Part shown: in pieces, positions 495-30,553 of the stretch | Layout: each line of letters begins with the position of its first letter | Numbering within the stretch: the stretch's first letter is position 1 | NCBI GenBank assembly: GCA_016748015.1 | Contig: JAAOMT010000514.1 | Location: 1-30,553, forward strand | Length of the DNA: 30,553 nucleotides | Direction of reading: 5' to 3' | Source of the DNA: Geosiphon pyriformis uo1 | Lineage: Eukaryota > Fungi > Glomeromycota | The notes under the pieces: generated by a model | What the model was told of the DNA's origin: nothing | Seen by the model: the letters and a program-made list of their open reading frames with translations, nothing else | Databases searched by the model: none | Position numbers and translations under genes: made by a program

Positions 495-2362
495 TTATTC
501 TAACTCAGGCATCCTTAACACATCACGGACCTTTGTTTCTTTAGTTCTAAGTACAGATTGATTAATTTTTTCCGTCAACGCCTCCTGCTTTATCATTTCA
601 TCCTACAGAAAAGATACCACCATATAAATCACCAGAAATAAAAGTATGGTCAGATACCTAATCTAAACACATACATGAAAGATAGCCATCATCCTGAGGA
701 CAGCTTTATATTGGCTCCGGGCATTAAAACTGAAAGGTATTGTGGCTGTAGCAAGCTCTGTTACAAGAAAATATCCATCAGGAAGCATGCTGAGAGCATA
801 AAGGGTAAGTTGATTGTCTGAAGTGATGGGAATGGAATATTAGAAAATACAACCTCTTAACATAAACCATATACCATGCACTTACTTATTGACTGGATGC
901 TAAAAACCTAATCTTCACTGCAAGTTTCACTTCGCAATCGAGGTGGTCCCGTAATATTGCGATTAAATTCAGAATATCAGTCCAGTGTTTTCTTTGAGTC
1001 ATCTAAGGTGTGCTTCTCACTTGCATTATAAGGAGGGCCTGCAACTTCCATGTGCCAAATATCTAATTCATCATAGGATCTTGTTGCCTTAATATCCACT
1101 GCACAATCCCAGAATTGTTTGATGACTTCATTATTTTTGCAGCGCGAGCTTGCGATTCGATCCAATCGAATTCAAGGTTAAGAAAAGTTCTTTCATAATA
1201 TTTAAATAAAGAGGATACTTGATATACTATGTGTTTTCGTTCCCCTATTTTTCTGCTCATTGTAGGATTGACATCTATAAGGTGGTAACTAAATGAAAGC
1301 AATTATTGGTATCTTCTTTGATATTAATATACAAATAGATATTAATGTTTACAAGTCAGTGAGAACTTTTTCACAATAAAGTCTAAAACGCTCATCTCCA
1401 TCCCCTGACAATTTAGCTTGGACTTTAGTTTTGTAATTATCCATTGTTTCTTCGAAGATAGCGTCAAGATACTTCTCCAAGGCAGGTGTTCATACAGCAG
1501 GATTAATATGACGCATAGAGGACACCTCCACAGCAAGTTCCTCTCCAATTTTTGATGACAACTCCTCAATCGTCTCCCCAGATGCACATACTATAGAGAT
1601 GTCTTGGATAAATCTATCATATAAAGAGAGCAAAGTTAAGAATCTCTTATTGTAAAGTGATACGTAGCAGGTAGAAAAACGGGATTTACTGCTGAAGTTC
1701 TTCCTTCTCATATGGTCGCTTATTGGGAGTTATTTTCAATGGCGTTAAATCTATGAAAGTTTGAGGTGGAGTTTTGGGTGCAGGCGGAAGAATAGGCAGA
1801 ACAGACCCTGATTGCAAATGGGCTTGGAAGATATCAGTTTTTGCGTTAAGGCATATCACATCCTGCAGGTGATAATATGTGAGTATTCCGTTCGAAACGA
1901 GTGTGCATACATCCATACTAACCCACCTCAGCAGTGCTGTGAATGTTAACCGATAGCTTACACGCTTTTTTGTTTCGAAGAATGTGGCACATGTTCCTGC
2001 TATTGCTACTCCCATATTAGACTATAATTATTCGAGTTTTTGTATGAGTTTTGGGTTTTATGTATTAATCAAAAATTGCAATAATACCGCACCTTCAGCC
2101 ACGTAATGTAACTGTTACAGAAAGCTCTGATTGGATTAGGCGTAACCGCAAGTTGATTTTTTTGAGCTAAGCTATCAGTGAAAAAATTGCAATATTGAAC
2201 GAAGTCAAGCTCCATCCCGGTTTCAGATATATACACGGTATATTCTTGAATACATTAGGTAGATGCTTTCCGACTCTTGAAGTAGTCCTCGACATAATTC
2301 ACATCTGGAGTACAAAGATACTCGAAATGTCTTGTCGAAGAAAGGCGTGGTTCACGTTCCAT
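495..2362 (-). pseudogene. Multi-exon pseudogene of an uncharacterised fungal protein family (possible PD-(D/E)xK/REase-like C-terminal domain)
   Basis: Hand splicing links the short ORFs through GT-AG introns: MEREPRLSS...YVEDYFKSRKAST*CIQEY...ITWLK | SNMGVAIAG...LLRW | DVICL... | ...LEKYLDAIFE...FRLYCEKVLTD | YHLIDV...RKIGERKH...FDWIE...VDIKATRSYDELDIWHMEVAGPP...TDILNLIAILRDHLDC... | NQLTLYALSMLPDG...YKAVLRMMAIFH | DEMIKQE...VRDVLRMPELE* (TAA 495-497). Lesions: TAA at 2255-2257, TGA at 1490-1492, frameshifts near 1100, 980 and 910. The fold assignment is inferred from the D...E-V-A-G spacing only. Confidence 0.8.
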
Positions 2363-8333: not shown

Positions 8334-9801
8334 ATGAATTACTTTTTCAATTATTTTGCCAAATGTGTTCTTTATAATTTTGTTCTTTCTGTTCTTGAAT
8401 TTAATACCTGTTCTTCGTTCCCAAACAATAAATATACCTATTAAAATCCAAGAAAAGGTGTTGTTTAATGAGTATTTAGTAAAAGAACAATCCTACAATA
8501 AAACTCAACTATTATCTTCTTTTAAACAAAATCAATTTGTTAATGAATCAATTCAAAAAAGAAATCCACAAATTTTTCTTAATAGACCAGCCGCTGACCT
8601 TTATAATCAGTTAGTTGCAATAAAAGGAGATAGCGTAGATGTAACGTTTGTTAAAAAGACAGTGGAAGATATAGATATTTTGCAGGTATTGGATTCTGCG
8701 GCAAAATTTTCATGGATGGTATCATGTCAACAAGTTTTAAATAACAGAAAAAACTATTTGGTTGGTAAAAGACAAAAAAAGTTTGGGGTTAGTAAATAAT
8801 AATCCTTTCTTGAAGTTCATTATTAATTCTTAAAAAAAACCCCCATTTAATTTTATTTAATAAATCAATATTTTTTTTAAAACAGCAATATTTTCAGAAA
8901 AAACGATTGCTTTTAATACTCCAGAGTATGATTTTGATTATTTCACATTAGTTTCAAGCAATCGTAGATGAGGTACCATTTCTTACCCTCACGTAGAATA
9001 TGGTTTGGTGACCGAAGTTTTTTATCAATGTTGGGAAACCTGTAAAACTTGGTTCTGGGAGAAATTGAGAATTTTTGAAGAGAAAAACAATTTAAAAGAT
9101 CAATTGAACCAATATACATTTACAGGTTTTGGAATTGGAGCTGGTAAATAAAAATTTATATTCATTGAAAAACTATTGTGGAAAGAAAATTCTAAAATTT
9201 ACAATTTTGTGGTATTTGCTGCACTTGAATATAAAAGGGAATATATAAAAGCATCAATAACTCTTATTACATTCGGACAACCGAGAATTGGAAATAATCA
9301 ATTCATCTATTATATCGAACTCTTGGTGAAACTTTGGAGAGTAACTTATTGTGACGACTGGGTCCCTAATTTCCAATTGAAGATATTGATCATAAAAAAA
9401 AGAGGCTTAGTAATAAAGCTTTTAGATCTCCTATATAGACATTTTAGAAAAGAATTCTGTTTAGAACCTTCATGCGATTGTGCAAACCCAAAAATTTATT
9501 TATGTTATCACACGGTGACTTTAGATGAGAATGAGGTAATTTTCTTTGTTCTTTGTTCTTTGTGCTTTCTGCTTTCTGCTTTTTTTTTGAGTTTCACAAA
9601 AAAATCAAATTTATCAATATGATTAAAAAATATTATCAAGAGTTGCAATGGAAGAAATCATCCTTATAAAACAACATATCATACAAGTGGCTGGGAAGAT
9701 TCAATGAAATATTATAAACACATGCTGATAATCAGCATCTAGGTCCATATTTAGGGCATACAATGTTTCAAGATTGTTTTACAACAAAAGTACCTTTGTG
9801 A
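8334..9801 (+). pseudogene. Class-3 lipase-like pseudogene (copy L1), elbow GFGIGA
   Basis: Hydrophobic N-terminus and SAAKFSWMVSC. Exon 2 reads IAFNTP...NRR*(TGA 8969-8971)...YPHVEYGLVTEVFY...YTFTGFGIGA with a GT donor at 9144. Exon 3 reads VFAALEY...ITFGQPRIGNNQF...WRVTYCDDWVP...YRH...CDC...DENE. Exon 4 reads SCNG...(frameshift)NQHLGPYLGHTMFQDC...* (TGA 9799-9801). The ATG at 8334 is out of frame and the intron-2 acceptor looks damaged. Confidence 0.88.
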
Positions 9802-10853
9802 CAAAAAACTTTGAAAGGCATCCTTTTCGGAACCAAATAGAGGTTGTTTTTCTTGAAAATTTTCAAAAGATACAAGTAAATAAATTTGTCTTATTATTTG
9901 TAATTTAAAACATGAGTCGATTTTTAAAATTTATTTATATTTTAAGTTTGTAATTGTATGAATTTTGTCTTTTTTATTTTTATATTTTGAAATCATTTGC
10001 TTCAATCGAAATTTCTTTTTTGCTGTTAATACTAATATAAATATGTTGCAATTTTCAAACAATGAGCTTTGCTTTGATTTGATTACATGAATTTAACACC
10101 TCGAAGTTATATATATTTTCATCAGAGAAAACCAAAAAAATTAATGATGCCAATTGTTAATTCTAATCATAAACTAGAAAGTTATACATGTATTAAAAAT
10201 AAAAATTTGGTAATAAATGCTTTTCAAAATGTCTTGTGCATCATATCATACTGTATGTATACGTAATTGAATTCTATTTGTTTGCACCGCAAATTTCGGA
10301 GGAAAAATAACTTTTTAGTTTTTCTCATTATAAAAACTTGGACATATTCTAAATGTAGCAAGAAACGATAATAATTTCCAGCGATCCAAAAAAGTACATT
10401 TTTACCTTATAAATGTAAAGCCTTGAAAGTTTTCTTACCGATTGTTTTACTTATTATAGGTCCACTTTGATTCCAAGATCAAAAAATAGGAATCGTTTCC
10501 AGATAAGGAATAGACATGGAGGAAATTTATCTAATGATAAATTATTATCATATTTAAAATCAAGAATTCCAGAAATTTTTCTTTAAATATAATAGGAATT
10601 TAATCAATGTCCAAACATTTGGTCATCTCACGATGCGATGTTAACTTTGAAACTTTTAACATGTTTTTGTTTTGGAAAATTATTCAAAACGATAAGATTG
10701 ATGAAAATATTTGAAATTTTAAGAATTTCTAATAATAAATAATTAGAAAGCTCTCCTGATTCTTTAGATTCGAAAAATTATGTTTAAAAAAAAAAGATTT
10801 CTTTGACTAGAAATATCAGATGGCTTTTGAATTTTAGAAAGTCTTTCAAACAC

Positions 10854-11223
10854 ATGATCCTCATGGAATTAACATTTCTGATTCTTTTCTTTATTTTACC
10901 CTTCTTTTTATCTCGTCGACCCCTATTGGGATCAGGTTCGAAATTTATACAAATCTCTTTAATAAGAAATCACACAATACTTGATCATCCTATAAATCTT
11001 CAGCAAACTTTGCTATTTCCAAAAATTAAGACGCAAGATTTGGAAGTTTTCAAAACAGATAGCATCAAAGAAAAAAATAAATTAGAAGAAAGATATACTG
11101 AGCATTCTTTTTTTGTTAAAAGTCAAGTCAAAAATAATGAACTTTTAAAAATGCTTTCTAAAAAAGCAGACTTGGCATGGAAAGCACACTGCTATTTAGC
11201 CGAAAAACGTTTTCAAGAAAAAA
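10854..11223 (+). pseudogene. Exon 1 only of a lipase-like paralog (copy L2), cut off by the decayed TE block
   Basis: Signal-like MILMELTFLILFFILPFFLS. KKADLAWKAHC matches EKAELARKAFC of the intact gene. A GTAAGT donor at 11224 sits about 10 codons after the Cys, as in the paralogs. No downstream exons were found. Confidence 0.72.
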
Positions 11224-13104
11224 GTAAGTAATTAAAATGAAATTTTCAAGTGATAGAATTTCAAGTTCTAGTACTAATACAACTAATTATTATAAGTTAT
11301 TAACTTATGTATTTTAGTACTTAATGTATACTTAAGTAGAAGGTGTATTCTATATTGATAAGAAGTATATTTTGTGAATTGTAATTTAAGAAGATTTATT
11401 CGAAATATATTTTTCAGAATCATTACAAATGTAAACATTATAATATTAGTTGTTAAGTTTTAGATCTTTTATTAATTTTTACATCTGGATATTTCTATTT
11501 ATATTATTAGAATACAATTCTTTGAATTATATTAAGTAAAAATATTTAAGCATAAATCAATAGAAAATGCAAATAATAGAGAATTACAAATCAACAACTT
11601 ATATTAGCCTTCTTAAAATTATAAACTTGATAAATTTTTAATTAATTAAAAATTGCAATTGTTGAAAATTAAATTATTCTAATCCACATTTAACTTTGAA
11701 TCCAAAAGTCTTTATCTTCTCAAAAACGCGTATGTAAATAAATGCTAATAAGAGCAAACCAATTTTTTAGATAATTATATAAAGCGATTTCTGATTTGAT
11801 TTATTTGTCTTGTGATCAATAATAATTTTAATATGACCTTTTTCAACTGGAATTGTAAAAAATATTTGATCTTGAAATGCTTTCAATACTTTTTTTTATT
11901 GTTAAGTTTGATAGATTTGTAACCAGACACAAAAGTTCAATTAGGTCAACAAATTACCACCATTAGATATTTTAGTTTGATAACAATGTTAGAAATTTGT
12001 ATTAGAAAACAAATAATAAACTTTCTTTGCCTGCATAAATGCTTTTTTTCTTAGGAGAATTCAAAAAAAAATGAATAAATGTATGAAAAACTCAAAAATA
12101 TCTACCTTTTTTAAATTTTTACGAATTCTCTTAATGACTTCATTATTATACAAAATTATTATCAATAAAATAATTTTTATACTGTTGATTAAATATGCTT
12201 TCAAAAACATTTATTGTAATAATTCTATTATCTAGCTTTACATAAGAATTTTTTGCAGAAATATTTTGCTTCAGTTTTACTGATTTTTAAATAAAATCTT
12301 ATTATTTCTGTCTCTGTAAATTTCAATCTTTAATTATATTTTAGACTTAATGAATTGTAAAATAGTGTTTAAAATGTCAATAAAATTGTTAATATTTTTA
12401 GTTAAAAGAAAATCTATCATTGTGATAATTATGTTTAATTAATAAAAATAATGAAATATTATTTTTCCAACAAAGTCAATCACACCATCTTAGCTTATAA
12501 TTATTATTAAAATTTTCCTAAATTTTTAACTTTTAAAGATATAATAAAACAGAAGCTCTTAATTTATTAGCTTAATAAATCTATAATATTTTATTTTTAA
12601 ATGTTAAACAAAGATTTGTAATTCAATTAGCTACAAAAATCCTCTCTTTAATTTTAGAAATTTTATTTCAGATTGATTTTTATTTTTATAATACTTAAAT
12701 TTAGAGCCATTTAAAAGAATCTTGAGCGGTTTAATAAATATTATATTTCTTAGCGATAATTTTGTAACCAAATAATTTTCTGAAGTGAAAAGTTTTTTCA
12801 TTGTGAAATATTTAAAAGCAAATAATTAAACCTAATCCGAAATAGAAGATTGGGTTATTGGCTTTCCAAATTATTAAAAAGTTGATTCTATATTCAATTG
12901 ATCAAAAATATTATTAAAAGAGCTAAATATTCAAGGAAGTAGGTAAAAAAGTATAAAATCTTTTTTATAATGTTAATTGACTATTTAAACAACCAATATT
13001 TTCGCATTAATGGTTGAATATTTTTGAAAAACCATTTTCATTTTGATGATATATTCAAGATAACCTTGAACCAATTATAAATAATAAACAATAATATTAA
13101 TAAT

Positions 13105-25289: not shown

Positions 25290-26661
25290 TTAACAAGTCA
25301 TCGTTACTTCATAATAAGGCCCGAAATGATCATTATCCCCCTGTTGACCGCTAGAATTTACACACATCTTTTTATAAAGCAAAATTATATTTAGATGATT
25401 TTTAATAAAAGTTATGCTTATTTCACTTAAAGGTTTTTCAGTTACCTGACTTTCAAGTGAGGTATCGCTATTACAATAGAAGGATTCCCGATCCACGCCA
25501 TTGTTCCAGATCTCAGTTCCATCGTGGATATACTCTCCAGTTGGCAGTTGGGGAATTTTATCATGCCCAAAAGTTGAACGCCAATGTTCCAGCCGATCAT
25601 CAGCCCCTTCTGCGAATTTCTCATTCCCAATTCTAGGCTGGCCGAATGTAAACACCAAAGGTTTCGGAATATTTGGCAAATTATTTTGTGCATAATCTAG
25701 AGCTGCCAATTCAGCATACACTAATAAATTCCATTATAATCGATTGGGAATCCAAAAAAAAAAAAATTTCTTATTCCTAAAGAATGAACAATCTTTGAAG
25801 CCAGACACAATTTTATTTTAGCTAAAAGACAGACTTACCTCCACCGATCCCAAAACCAACAAATGTTACTAAATTTGAATCTTTTTTAGCTTGCTCTATT
25901 ATTGAATTTATATCGGCTAAATTTTCTGAATGCCAATTTTTATATTCATCTCGAAATTTTTGTAAAATCCTTGCACCAGATATTGGATTTTCCTCAGGAA
26001 ATTGGCTCATGTGATCAGCAGATTGAAGGTCCTTCAGCAAGGTTTCTTCATTGCCAGCAAAAGAAATATTTATTTCATCTTCAGATTTTTCAGCAAAATC
26101 TGAAAACAGAATTCAAGCCATGACTTTTTTTTATTGAAATTCAAGTTGATGCTTCTTAATTGTTGTTAATCTTTTTTTAAAAAACTTACGGTAAATCTTA
26201 TCAGATTGATCATTCTTACTTTTTCGAGTACAAAAGGCTTTTCTAGCCAGTTCAGCTTTTTCTTTCATCCAAGATTGATCTCTAGGACTAACTATGTGAT
26301 CATATAAAGATTCTGTCACTTTATCTTCTTGCACTAGAAATTCATTTATGGAGAACCAGGAAAAACCCTTTGATCCAAAGTTTAATGGATCAGAACTCGT
26401 TTCAAAAGATACCGCTGCATCTGTTTTGAATGGGTCATTGAAATTAAAGTTCAAAATGGAACTTTCATCATTCAAATTAAGATAATCATTGGTCGAAGCC
26501 AAAATTGGTTCCCCAAAAATATTTTGCTCAGAATCCAAAGTTATTGGTGAGGCTGTGACCACCATTATATTGGGATTTGAGATCGATGACAATTGCCATA
26601 TTATTCTTATTAAAACTATGAGAAAAATTTTGTATGCTAAGTTCGAAATTTTATTTGGCAT
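25290..26661 (-). CDS. Intact class-3 lipase-fold protein (copy L4), 361 aa, secreted/anchored, catalytic Ser replaced by Gly
   Basis: Exons 26661-26190, 26099-25839, 25720-25446 and 25367-25290 are all bounded by GT-AG introns with consistent phases (1,1,0), giving 1086 nt with no internal stop. Motifs: hydrophobic N-terminus, ELARKAFC, ISFAGN, VTFVGFGIGGVYAELAA, VFTFGQPRIGNEKFA, WRSTFGHDKIPQLP, YIHDGTEIW, DHFGPYY. An alternative ATG at 26691 is not conserved in the duplicate. Confidence 0.9.
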
Positions 26662-27066
26662 GGTGAGAATATCTATGCTAGAATTTTGCATAATAGAAAG
26701 TTATAAATTAATCCGTTTGCTTATATGTAGTTTTTTATCGGTTTTTTCGACCAGTGTGATAACCTCAAAGTTTTTCCACATATTAAAACATAATATCTTA
26801 AACCAATGATGGATAATCCGAAATTAGTGATGATTAATAATTTGCTTAGTAGATTGTTGATTAGCTGTGATAAAAAAATTTTCGTTTATCCGAATTTATA
26901 TTATAATCCAAATAAATCATAATTGATTTTTTTAGAATACTTACTCAAAAATAATCATTTATTTGAATAAAACATTTATTTAATTTAGCATTTTTAAATC
27001 ATATACTTTGTAATTATATCAATATGACAGAACAACTTAATGTGAAAAGAAAAACCTCACCTGTTA

Positions 27067-27255
27067 CAGTCGCCTCCGAAATTAACGCCCGATTTTGGTG
27101 TAACAAAGTACTCGAAAATTTACCATGATCTGGACGCCCACCAGCTCTCAATAACCAAACAAAAAGTGCTCTCTTACGAAAAGTTAAAAATGAACGACGT
27201 AAACCACTACAAGAGATTGTTGATGATTTGAAGCTTAATTGCAGTTTAACAACAG
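27067..27255 (+). mobile_element. Left end of Tc1-like element, cut by assembly gap
   Basis: TA followed by the TIR CAGTCGCCTCCGAAATTAACGCCCGA. Encodes LP*SGRPPALN...RRKPLQEIVDDL (GRPR-like motif). Confidence 0.88.
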
Positions 27256-27275
27256 NNNNNNNNNNNNNNNNNNNN

Positions 27276-27750
27276 TACGGTAAATCTTATCAGATTGATC
27301 ATTCTTACTTTTTCGAGTACAAAAGGCTTTTCTAGCCAGTTCAGCTTTTTCTTTCATCCAAGATTGATCTCCAGGACTAACTATGTGATCATATAAAGAT
27401 CCTGTCACTTTATCTTCTTGCACTTGAATTTAATTTATGGAGAACGAGGAAAAACCCTTTGATCCAAAGTTTAATGGATCAGAACTCGTTTCAAAAGATA
27501 CCGCTGCATCTGTTTTGAATGGGTCATTGAAATTAAAGTTCAAAATGGAACTTTCATCATTCAAATTAAGATAATCATTGGTCGAAGCCAAAATTAGTTC
27601 CCCAAAAATATTTTGCTCAGAATCCAAAGTTATTGGTGAGGCTGTGACCACCATTATATTGGGATTTGAGATCGATGACAATTGCCATATTATTCTTATT
27701 AAAACTATGAAAAAAATTTTGAATGCTAAGTTCGAAATTTTATTTGGCAT
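27276..27750 (-). pseudogene. Near-identical second copy of L4 exon 1 with in-frame nonsense codon
   Basis: Part of the duplication 26187-27255 / 27276-28242. GAA>TAA at 27430-27432. The 3' part is lost in the gap 27256-27275. Confidence 0.8.
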
Positions 27751-28073
27751 AGTGAGAATATGTATGCTAGAATTTTGCAGAATAGAAAGTTATAAATTAA
27801 TTCGTTTGCTTATATGTAGTCTTTTATCGGTTTTTTCGACCCGTGTGATAACCTCAAAGTTTTTACACATATTAAAACATAATATCTTAAACCAATGATG
27901 GATAATCCGAAATTAGTGATGATTAATAATTTGCTTGGTAGATTGTTGATTAGCTGTGATAAAAAAATTTTCGTTTATCCGAATTTATATTGTAATCCAA
28001 ATAAATCATATACTTTGTAATTATATCAATATGACAGAACAACTTAATGTGAAAAGAAAAACCTCACCTGTTA

Positions 28074-29075
28074 CAGTCGCCTCCGAAATTAACGCCCGAT
28101 TTTGGTGTAACAAAGTACTCGAAAATTTACCATGATCTGGACGCCCACCAGCTCTCAATAACCAAACAAAAAGTGCTCTCTTACGAAAAGTTAAAAATGA
28201 ACGACGTTGATGATTTGAAGCTTAATTGCAGTTTAACAACAGCCCGTCGAGTACTTCATAACCATGGCATTCGAAGTTATATTGCAGCAAAAAAGCCTTT
28301 TATTTCAGAAAAACAGGCAAAGGCACGCATACTTTGGTGCAAAAAATATCAAAATAAAGACCTTTATTTTTGGAGACGGGTAATTTTTTCAGATGAAACC
28401 AGTGTAGACAAGTTAAAGTATGACGTCATATAGGAGAAAGATATAATATTGAATGCTTAACACCTAGCTTCAAAAGTGGACAATCAATAATGGCTTGGGG
28501 ATGCTTTGTTGGAGAACTTAGAGGTCCATTGACATTTTGTGATGAATACAAGGAAAAAACGGAAAAGATTACAGCAAAAACATATTTTAAGATTATAGAA
28601 ACTAATCTTTTACCATTTCTTACTGTTACTCATGATTTAGTAGCAAGAAATCCAATATTTCAACAAGACAATCCTCCTATTCATAATGCTGGAATTACGA
28701 AAAATGGTTCAAAGACAAAAACATTGAGATTATGGATTGGCCAGCCAGTTCTCCTAATCTAAACCCCATAGAAAATGTGTGGAAAATAATGAAGGACAAT
28801 ATTCAAAAACATGAAAACTTTCCAAGAACTATAGAGGAACTTAAAAGTGCTCTAAAGAAGGAATGGTCAAGTTTTAATATGTCAGTTTTGAAACGAGTTG
28901 TAGACTCAATGCCACAAAGAATTGAAGCAGTATTGGAAGCAAATGGAGGGCCAACACACTATTAATTATATATATATAAAAAGTTATATGTATATAAGTT
29001 AGGTTTAGAATAAATCAAATAAACATTTAAAATTGTATAAAAAATAAATTCAGGCATTAATTTCGGAGGTGACTG
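28074..29075 (+). mobile_element. Tc1/mariner (DD34E) DNA transposon, internally deleted, non-autonomous
   Basis: TIRs of about 26-30 bp (28074 onward, and ending at 29075) with TA on both flanks. Transposase fragments GRPP, KKPF, VIFSDE, MAWGCF, FQQDN, WPASSPNLNPIENVW, GGPTHY*. D-to-E spacing is 34 after restoring a 1-nt deletion near 28703. The first HTH is missing and there are frameshifts. Confidence 0.95.
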
Positions 29076-30553
29076 TACATTCAAATGCAAAATTTCAAAA
29101 AAACATTTTATTACTTTTGATAATATTACATCTTATACACTTGAAGATAATACTTTTTTTACCGATATCATTTTTTTTATTGTCATTTTTTAAATACAAA
29201 ACTTATTTGCTATCATGTTATGTTGAAATTATTTATTTTTTTGATTTTTACATTGGTAAATGCTTTTTTTTCTAATGATAATACTATAAATAAATCTAAT
29301 AAAAAAAATGCAATATGTTATAAATCAACTTTTAATTAATAAATTTATAAATTGGTAAAAAAATTTTGACTTTTTACTGGTTTTATAAACTTTTTAATCT
29401 CAGTTCAAAAAATTTTTACTTAAATTTGAGCTAAATAAAAATATGCAATTTAACTTTTATCTAAGTTGTGTTTATAAATTTTGAGTTTTTTATTTAAAAA
29501 GATGTTATAATAATAATAGGTTTTGGTTAACACATAAATTAACAATTAAAATAACATATATAAATTTATTATCATTTTGAATAAACATAATACATATAAC
29601 TTTTTGGGTATAATTACATGCATTGTGAATTATTTTAACATAAAAAATTTGGATTTAAAAAAAGTATTTAGAAACTTTTAGTAGTGTTTTGTTTTGTGTT
29701 TTTATTTCAATTTGTAAAATATTCATGTTATATAAAATTATTAAAGTTTCTGGTAAATGTGATTATGTTTTGCAAAGTAAACTTTTAAGAATTTAATTTT
29801 TTATAATATTAAACAATACATTTGGGATATATATAATATACTTAATTGTATTAAAAAAATTTTATTAACTGTAAAAATATTTGAATAAGAAGTTCTTAAA
29901 TTTGCTGTTTATTTGTGCAATCAAATTAAGCCAACTTATTCAAATAGGTTTAAAAAGATTAATACAACTGGGATTAAATGTAATAGATCTGTTCAATTGG
30001 GAATATTCGATGTTTGTAAATAAAAATTGTTGATTGAACATAAATTAGTGTAATTTTTATTAACTTAAGTGGACTGGTTATATATATAAAAAGCATAAAG
30101 TGTAATTAAATTAAATTATTTAAGCAATAAAAAAATTAAGTAATACTTTGAATTATATTATAACAAAAAGTTAACTAGAATAATTTTTATTGAAAAATAT
30201 GCCAAAGAAATTCTAAAATTAATTAATAGCTTAAAATATTTTTTTTGATCTTTTAAGCTTAAAACAAAATTTATTTTTAATTATTCTATAAAAGTTACTT
30301 TTAATTTGTCGAAAAAATAAATATGAAATTATTATAGTTAAAGGATTTATTAAAAAAAATTATAAATTAATTAACTTAAAAATAATTTGATATTAAACTT
30401 TTTAACAAATTGTGAATTTTAAAATGTGAAAATCTTAAGTTAGTTGTAATCCTTTACAGTTAAACATCGTTTAAAGAAGCAAAAAAATCGGATAGAAACA
30501 GATTATATCTATTAACATTAAAAATTAGAAAATAAAATTAACTTTTTTAGTTA

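What the first reader, a model, noticed from the sequence alone, without database searches (positions are those of the whole stretch)
8334..27750. Cluster of about six secreted pseudo-lipases sharing an ancestral Ser-to-Gly loss of the nucleophile
Seen: the three divergent paralogs with a readable elbow all have Gly at the G-x-S-x-G serine (GGA 9131-9133, GGA 21819-21821, GGG 25849-25851). They share three intron positions, a phase-1 intron right after the elbow, and the TFGQPRIGN, D-x-(V/I)-P and H-x-G-P-Y motifs (partly eroded in L3). Known: class-3 (Rhizomucor/Thermomyces-type) lipases need GHSLG serine with a Ser-Asp-His triad. Inference: the substitution predates the duplications and runs opposite to the local G>A/C>T decay, so it is a family trait rather than pseudogene damage. 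The family would be an expanded set of non-hydrolytic lipid-binding, carrier, decoy or effector proteins undergoing birth-and-death in a TE-rich compartment. If the organism is a fatty-acid-auxotrophic Glomeromycotina symbiont, a role in host-lipid capture or signalling is an attractive but untested hypothesis.
Basis: partly seen in the sequence, partly recalled or inferred. Interest (0 to 1): 0.88.

Follow-up and report, generated by a model that had tools for sequence, protein, structure and literature searches.

The report
Serine-less lipase look-alikes in Geosiphon
This stretch of the genome of Geosiphon pyriformis, a fungus that houses cyanobacteria, holds five mostly broken copies from a family of several hundred lipase-shaped genes. 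Most family members lack the serine needed to cut fat yet are kept by selection, so they probably bind something, and the serine may have been lost several times rather than once.

Summary
The organism is Geosiphon pyriformis. The Gly at the GxSxG serine is real in L1, L3 and L4. But I find five loci, not six, and they are not local tandem duplicates: the closest partners of L1, L3 and L4 are other copies, and a shared clade is rejected. L1, L2, L3 and L5 are broken. L4 is an open 371-aa frame keeping Asp and His, with a Rhizomucor-lipase fold. Spliced transcripts from two studies keep the Gly, but join L4 exon 1 to the exons of a 97% identical copy, so assembled L4 may be a chimera. Genome-wide, one strict pattern finds 83 Gly and 24 Ser elbows (roughly 370 Gly copies); old pairs have dN/dS 0.12-0.17. 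One ancestral loss is not supported: an all-Gly clade is rejected (p=0.007), Ser and Gly copies interleave, and AGY to GGY is one transition. Ser-keeping members of the expansion also lack the oxyanion-hole FRGT motif (0/9). Best reading: exported non-hydrolytic binders in birth-and-death evolution; ligand unknown. The scan noted this family many times on other DNA of this genome. I found no paper describing the serine loss.

The parts
8334..9800 (+). L1, broken four-exon lipase-like copy. Elbow GFGIGA (Gly codon 9131-9133). TGA at 8969, ATG out of frame with exon 1, no AG at the usual exon 3 acceptor, frameshifts in exons 3 and 4. Recent duplicate of the first domain of KAG9300143 (P0002), 87-98% identical per exon piece
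10857..11231 (+). L2, exon 1 only (hydrophobic N-terminus, donor near 11223); 89% to the next domain annotated in P0002; no exon 2-4 found
13105..14080 (.). Identical 478-nt copies either side of the gap 13583-13602: assembly overlap artefact, no gene crosses it
21233..22520 (-). L3, decayed copy with stops and frameshifts. Elbow F-T-K-H-G-V (Gly codon 21821-21819); catalytic Asp position reads Asn. 81% to the second domain of P0062, whose elbow is FTGHGVGG
26190..26691 (-). L4 exon 1: hydrophobic stretch (about residues 14-38), acidic Ser/Asn-rich pro-region, first helix. Identical to exon 1 of the spliced contig in run X2
25839..26099 (-). L4 exon 2: FAGN in place of the oxyanion-hole FRGT (Asn184, 26052-26050) and elbow GFGIGG (Gly251, 25851-25849)
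25446..25720 (-). L4 exon 3: TFGQPRIGN and catalytic-position Asp308 (25562-25560); Pfam Lipase_3 E 6e-10
25290..25367 (-). L4 exon 4: DHFGPY with catalytic-position His360 (25328-25326), then stop
27276..27780 (-). L5, 98% copy of L4 exon 1 with TAA at codon 117 and no start at codon 1; cut by the gap. Both versions exist in DNA run X1 (depth 92.6 and 95.2). Probably the exon 1 of the second of two copies
28072..29077 (+). Decayed Tc1/mariner element upstream of L5 (32-nt terminal inverted repeats, HTH_Tnp_Tc3_2 and DDE_3 pieces). A piece of its left end also lies at 27065-27255, upstream of L4

Best explanation
The window holds five pieces of a very large Geosiphon expansion of class-3 (Rhizomucor-type) lipase homologues that have mostly stopped being serine hydrolases. 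Shown: fold kept, nucleophile replaced by Gly in most copies, Asp and His kept, purifying selection on old copies, transcription and splicing of a Gly copy, constant copying and decay. Inferred mechanism: an exported lipase with pro-region duplicated. The oxyanion-hole/lid strand (F-R-G-T) changed early, so hydrolysis was already weak or gone. The elbow Ser, coded AGY and held in a strained turn that suits Gly (established knowledge, from memory), then changed to Gly by one A>G transition in several lineages, with occasional returns to Ser. The proteins work as secreted or surface binders: the groove holds an acyl or other ligand without cleaving it, and the variable surface gives many specificities. 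They most likely act at the interface with Nostoc or other microbes (partner recognition, lipid sequestration or uptake, or decoys). The ligand and partner are not shown.
For: Elbow tally 83 Gly, 22 Ser-AGY, 2 Ser-TCN, reversed control 0; the pattern catches 7 of 31 Gly copies in fetched loci, giving about 370 (rough). 106 of 106 readable ordinary class-3 lipase hits have Ser. Gly-Gly pairs L018/L025, L013/L017 and L036/L048 have dN/dS 0.12-0.17, like Ser pairs at 0.16-0.22. Core positions 92-100% conserved in 66 non-Ser rows, Asp 98%. The predicted structure of P0001 has pLDDT 88 and TM 0.81 to 3tgl. Spliced Gly contigs in two studies. xRG[ST] is present in 12/12 named Glomeromycotina lipases, 0/9 Ser-bearing and 3/34 non-Ser members of the expansion. 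All elbow Ser codons in fetched loci are AGY. All-Gly clade rejected, p-AU 0.007.
Against: No assay, no secretome data, no ligand. Secretion rests on hydropathy only. His and Asp are kept, which a pure binder need not do. Young pairs are near neutral or above (L035/L036 0.63, L041/L050 0.65, L4/C571 about 1.25), so many copies may be dead. Synonymous sites in old pairs are near saturation, so those ratios are rough. The tree backbone is weak (160 columns, about 80 of several hundred copies), so the order of events is not settled. The expressed transcript is not the window's L4 as assembled.
Confidence: 0.6

Rival explanations
1. One ancestral Ser-to-Gly loss at the base of the expansion, with the scattered Ser copies as repeated reversions GGY>AGY. 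Function as in the best explanation.
For: Parsimony ties (8 vs 8; 123 of 200 bootstrap trees tie). In two of the three larger trees the earliest branch of the expansion is an all-Gly trio. At least one Ser copy (P0128) is nested among Ala and Gly copies, so reversion happens. Ser codons are almost all AGY.
Against: Likelihood favours Ser at the L1/L3/L4 ancestor (P(Gly) 0.002-0.24). Bootstrap trees favour Ser 59 to 18. Canonical lipases of this genome also use AGY, so AGY does not mark reversion. A single loss with no reversion is rejected.
Confidence: 0.3
2. Not dead but changed chemistry: the kept His-Asp pair acts as a general base on water or substrate in the space left by the serine, as in alpha/beta-hydrolase-fold dioxygenases and lyases that need no nucleophile (from memory).
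For: Asp 98% conserved in non-Ser rows; His present in all ten non-Ser proteins listed with a readable last exon, and in L4.
Against: Asp and His also have structural roles. The oxyanion strand and lid region vary freely across copies, which fits many binding specificities better than one reaction.
Confidence: 0.15
3. Mostly non-functional copies spread by segmental duplication in a repeat-rich genome; Gly is a tolerated by-product and only the few canonical lipases matter.
For: Four of five loci here are broken; young pairs show dN/dS 0.63-1.25; transposons flank the genes.
Against: Deep Gly-Gly pairs keep open frames and core residues with synonymous sites near saturation; a Gly copy is spliced and transcribed.
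Confidence: 0.12
4. Some members, mainly the Ser-bearing ones of the expansion, remain active lipases or acyltransferases of altered specificity, and the Gly copies regulate or compete with them.
For: About a fifth of elbows keep Ser with Asp and His.
Against: Those copies lack the oxyanion-hole Ser/Thr (0/9). No evidence of complexes.
Confidence: 0.13

Closest known systems
Rhizomucor miehei / Rhizopus class-3 lipases (PF01764; PDB 3tgl, 1tic, 6a0w)
   Same: Fold (TM 0.81 by query length), TFGxPRxGN, Asp and His at catalytic positions, N-terminal hydrophobic stretch plus pro-region.
   Different: Gly instead of the nucleophile Ser; FAGN instead of the oxyanion-hole FRGS/T; hundreds of divergent copies.
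Canonical Glomeromycotina class-3 lipases (Rhizophagus, Glomus, Funneliformis, Entrophospora, Paraglomus, and a few in Geosiphon)
   Same: Nearest active-looking relatives; share HxGPY; the Geosiphon ones share the post-elbow intron.
   Different: All have GHSxG and F/Y-R-G-T/S. No Gly-elbow relative from another Glomeromycotina species turned up, though only 16 of the expansion's hits could be named, all Geosiphon.
EDS1/PAD4/SAG101 plant immune proteins
   Same: Class-3 lipase-like domain used without catalysis (known from memory); found as structural relatives.
   Different: Intracellular, few copies, carry an EP domain, work as heterodimers; EDS1 and PAD4 keep the triad (from memory).
Cholinesterase-like adhesion molecules (neuroligin, gliotactin) and other non-catalytic alpha/beta-hydrolase-fold proteins
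   Same: Exported fold that lost the elbow Ser, Gly in neuroligins, and works by binding (from memory; not checked in a paper here).
   Different: Another family of the fold; animal; small gene numbers.
Lipase expansion of G. pyriformis in the genome paper (Malar et al. 2021, PMID 33592192)
   Same: From memory the paper reports an expanded Lipase_3 family in this genome; consistent.
   Different: The paper was not held, so I could not check whether it notes the missing serine.

Membership tests
Class-3 lipase fold (PF01764) | Pfam match above the curated cut-off | tested here: met
   Exon 3 of L4, L1, L3: 39.6, 38.3, 31.4 bits vs cut-off 22
Class-3 lipase fold (PF01764) | Rhizomucor-type alpha/beta-hydrolase structure | tested here: met
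   Model of P0001 (C571 copy, exons 2-4), pLDDT 88; best match 3tgl, TM 0.81
Active class-3 lipase | Ser in G-x-S-x-G | tested here: not met
   Gly251 aligns to Ser200 of the Rhizophagus lipase P0162; Gly kept in spliced contigs
Active class-3 lipase | Catalytic Asp and His | tested here: met
   L4 Asp308 and His360 align to D259 and H315 of P0162; L3 has Asn at the Asp position
Active class-3 lipase | Oxyanion-hole F-R-G-S/T | tested here: not met
   L4 FAGN vs FRGT
Active class-3 lipase | Ester hydrolysis | not testable with these tools
   Needs recombinant protein
Secreted protein | Cleavable signal peptide and export | tested here: inconclusive
   Hydrophobic stretch at residues about 14-38 of L4; no signal-peptide predictor or proteomics available
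Selected pseudoenzyme family | Purifying selection on Ser-less copies | tested here: met
   Old pairs dN/dS 0.12-0.17; young pairs 0.63-1.25
Selected pseudoenzyme family | Transcribed and spliced | tested here: met
   One Gly gene, runs X2 and X3, GT-AG introns removed; not shown for the window's own exons 2-4
Single-origin Ser-to-Gly clade | Gly copies monophyletic | tested here: not met
   p-AU 0.007 on 40 rows
Single-origin Ser-to-Gly clade | Gly at the common ancestor of L1, L3 and L4 | tested here: inconclusive
   Parsimony 8 vs 9 and 8 vs 8; likelihood P(Gly) 0.002-0.24
EDS1/PAD4/SAG101 | C-terminal EP domain | tested here: not met
   L4 ends 11 residues after the His

The most novel reading that the evidence does not exclude
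Geosiphon has turned a digestive lipase into a repertoire of several hundred exported, variable binding proteins that recognise or condition its Nostoc partner (or capture its lipids), and the catalytic serine was lost again and again after the oxyanion hole had gone: a fungal recognition repertoire built on a dead lipase scaffold.
Probability: 0.2. Interest if true: 0.85.

Novelty: new variant of a known kind. Interest (0 to 1): 0.55.

Why it matters
Geosiphon is the known Glomeromycotina member that partners Nostoc cyanobacteria instead of plants (PMC11134847), and its relatives cannot make their own fatty acids (PMC9620820). To my knowledge, how it recognises and feeds on Nostoc is open. 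If its lipase expansion is mostly non-catalytic, counting Pfam hits as lipid-digesting capacity is wrong, and a large testable candidate set for partner recognition or lipid handling appears. The family is also a natural experiment on how enzymes die: Ser, Gly, Ala, Cys and Asp elbows coexist, one transition separates Ser from Gly, and the oxyanion strand seems to go first. This window itself is a poor specimen: four of five loci are broken and the fifth may be mis-phased.

Tried and rejected
Ser reading of the L3 elbow (AWSFGG frame): rejected, since the partner P0062 has FTGHGVGG. Sixth copy: none found by HMM or tblastn; the match at 18412-18871 is a roughly 40-nt repeat annotated as a tail of P0062. 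Local tandem origin: rejected (p-AU 7e-63). The post-elbow intron and HxGPY as Gly-family marks: rejected. Word-based homolog searches with family queries found almost nothing because copies are too divergent; this says nothing about range. The atlas search gave only generic class-3 lipase clusters. Paper searches found no report of serine-less lipases in Geosiphon; the genome and metagenome papers were not held. One tree row (P0004a) was mis-parsed as Ser; it was relabelled and dropped. The first tree had L3 exon 3 in the wrong frame and was not used for L3. The joined spliced model was not sent to any search or fold tool: searches were exon by exon or with public proteins; joining was done only in local scripts, with X at breaks in L1 and L3.
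Full report
Organism and setting. The window is a whole 30.5-kb contig (C568) of a 128.3-Mb, 792-contig assembly. The nearest public proteins to L4 are Geosiphon pyriformis G9A89 models. Pfam Lipase_3 gives 783 first-look candidates in this genome, of which 150 were scored, yielding 180 exon-level matches.

Observation. The three Gly codons are at the stated places. A family HMM and tblastn find five loci, not six. L1 has a TGA at 8969, a lost acceptor and several frameshifts. L2 and L5 are first exons only, L5 with a stop. L3 is riddled with stops. L4 is an open 371-aa frame in four exons with GT-AG introns. The gap at 13583 is flanked by identical 478-nt copies, an assembly overlap. The gap at 27256 separates two overlapping versions of the L4 upstream region.

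The cluster is a mosaic. L1 and L2 match the first two domains annotated in P0002, from another contig. L3 matches P0062. L4 exons 2-4 are 97% identical to a copy on C571. A clade of L1, L3 and L4 is rejected.

Expression, and a caveat on L4. Contigs from runs X2 and X3 (two studies) skip the three introns exactly between them, so a Gly-elbow gene is transcribed and spliced. Their 8, 14 and 1 differences in exons 2, 3 and 4 are exactly the counts of the C571 differences, and the listed ones match; none touches the elbow. Exon 1 in X2 is identical to L4's. DNA run X1 shows two versions of exon 1 (depth 92.6 and 95.2) and two of exon 3 (81.6 of 176.4). The C571 copy reads N where exon 1 should be, and L5 ends at a gap. 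The simplest reading is two copies in all: an expressed one (L4 exon 1 plus C571 exons) and a dead one (L5 exon 1 plus the window's exons 2-4), with L4 as assembled a phase swap. This is inference from contigs; the two versions could also be alleles, and long reads would settle it. The near-neutral difference between the copies (19 non-synonymous, 4 synonymous) fits one of them being dead.

Anatomy. L4 has a hydrophobic N-terminal stretch, an acidic pro-region and the lipase domain. Against a Rhizophagus lipase, Gly251 stands at the nucleophile, Asp308 and His360 are kept, and FAGN replaces the oxyanion-hole FRGT. The model of P0001 (pLDDT 88) matches Rhizomucor lipase best, TM 0.81; EDS1/PAD4 appear lower in the same list.

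Family. One strict elbow-plus-donor pattern gives 83 Gly, 22 Ser-AGY and 2 Ser-TCN sites, with none for the reversed control. It catches 7 of 31 Gly copies in fetched loci, so there are roughly 370 Gly copies, with wide error. Ala, Cys and Asp elbows occur too. All four Gly codons are used, about half GGA or GGG, two steps from AGY. Outside the expansion, 106 of 106 readable class-3 lipase hits have Ser, including all named Glomeromycotina ones. Old Gly pairs have dN/dS 0.12-0.17, like Ser pairs; young pairs 0.63-1.25 (simple counts). Core residues are 92-100% conserved in non-Ser copies. So the Gly is a family trait under selection, with constant birth and death.

History. On 98 rows, the expansion (79 rows, 94/91) separates from canonical lipases. 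L1 and L3 fall in a 44-row, nearly all non-Ser group (94/89). L4 falls in a separate 12-row clade (100/95) that includes two Ser copies. Other Ser copies branch from the unresolved base. An all-Gly clade is rejected (p-AU 0.007). At the ancestor of L1, L3 and L4, parsimony needs 8 steps for Ser and 9 for Gly, or 8 and 8. Of 200 bootstrap trees, 123 tie, 59 favour Ser and 18 favour Gly. Likelihood gives P(Gly) 0.002 with free rates and 0.24 with equal rates. A single ancestral loss is therefore not supported, though a basal loss with many reversions is not excluded; P0128 looks like a reversion. Rows left out: two long foreign rows and most foreign lipases from then on, and L014 and the mis-parsed P0004a.

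A clue to mechanism. The motif xRG[ST] is in 12/12 named Glomeromycotina lipases and 85/106 ordinary hits, but in 0/9 Ser-bearing and 3/34 non-Ser members of the expansion. I infer that hydrolysis faded through the oxyanion strand first. The serine, coded AGY and sitting in a strained turn that Gly tolerates best (established knowledge, from memory), was then free to become Gly by one transition, repeatedly. The products most likely bind rather than cut. A His-Asp general-base chemistry remains a rival because both residues are kept.

Comparison and novelty. It works like other non-catalytic alpha/beta-hydrolase-fold binders (EDS1/PAD4/SAG101, neuroligin; from memory). It has the class-3 lipase fold but fails two defining features of an active lipase. 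Pseudoenzymes are a known kind; a fungal expansion of hundreds that is mostly Ser-less is a new variant as far as the searchable papers go. I could not read the genome paper. The scan's own notes record the same family on many other pieces of this genome. I tested the family claims independently; my results agree on size, selection and fold, and add the transcript, the probable chimera and the repeated-loss reading.

Verdict. Observation partly confirmed, interpretation partly supported. A real and surprising family with unknown ligand; this window is mostly its debris. Interest 0.55.

Noticed in passing
window 1344-1559 and 2413-2628: 216-nt inverted repeat, 99% complementary, 853 nt apart, with short open frames around it (977-2636, GC 30-38%) and no Pfam match below E 0.08; looks like a transposon or fold-back remnant.
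   Followed up: partly
window 18375-18870: Imperfect repeat of about 40 nt, also annotated as the C-terminal tail of P0062, so it was probably copied together with L3.
   Followed up: partly
window 27065-27255 and 28072-29077: Decayed Tc1/mariner element sitting just upstream of L4/L5; high read depth in X1 shows many copies.
   Followed up: partly
P0002, P0004, P0010, P0016, P0041, P0062: NCBI models with two or three lipase domains; probably neighbouring genes fused by the annotation (P0062 also retains an intron), so public protein counts understate the family.
   Followed up: no
L006, L020: A separate lipase-like type (GHSLGA, long open frames without the post-elbow intron) in the same genome, unrelated to the expansion.
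   Followed up: no
P0044 (ERR1711998_226051): An unnamed metagenomic class-3 lipase homologue with elbow GHGLGS and an ordinary DHLTY tail: apparently an independent Ser-to-Gly case outside the Geosiphon expansion.
   Followed up: no
L003, L011, L026, P0133, P0140: Elbows with Cys, Ala or Asp instead of Ser or Gly; the Cys and Asp copies could in principle have a different nucleophile.
   Followed up: no
window 14130-14800: A-rich stretch with long low-complexity frames, possibly a decayed retroelement; no lipase match.
   Followed up: no
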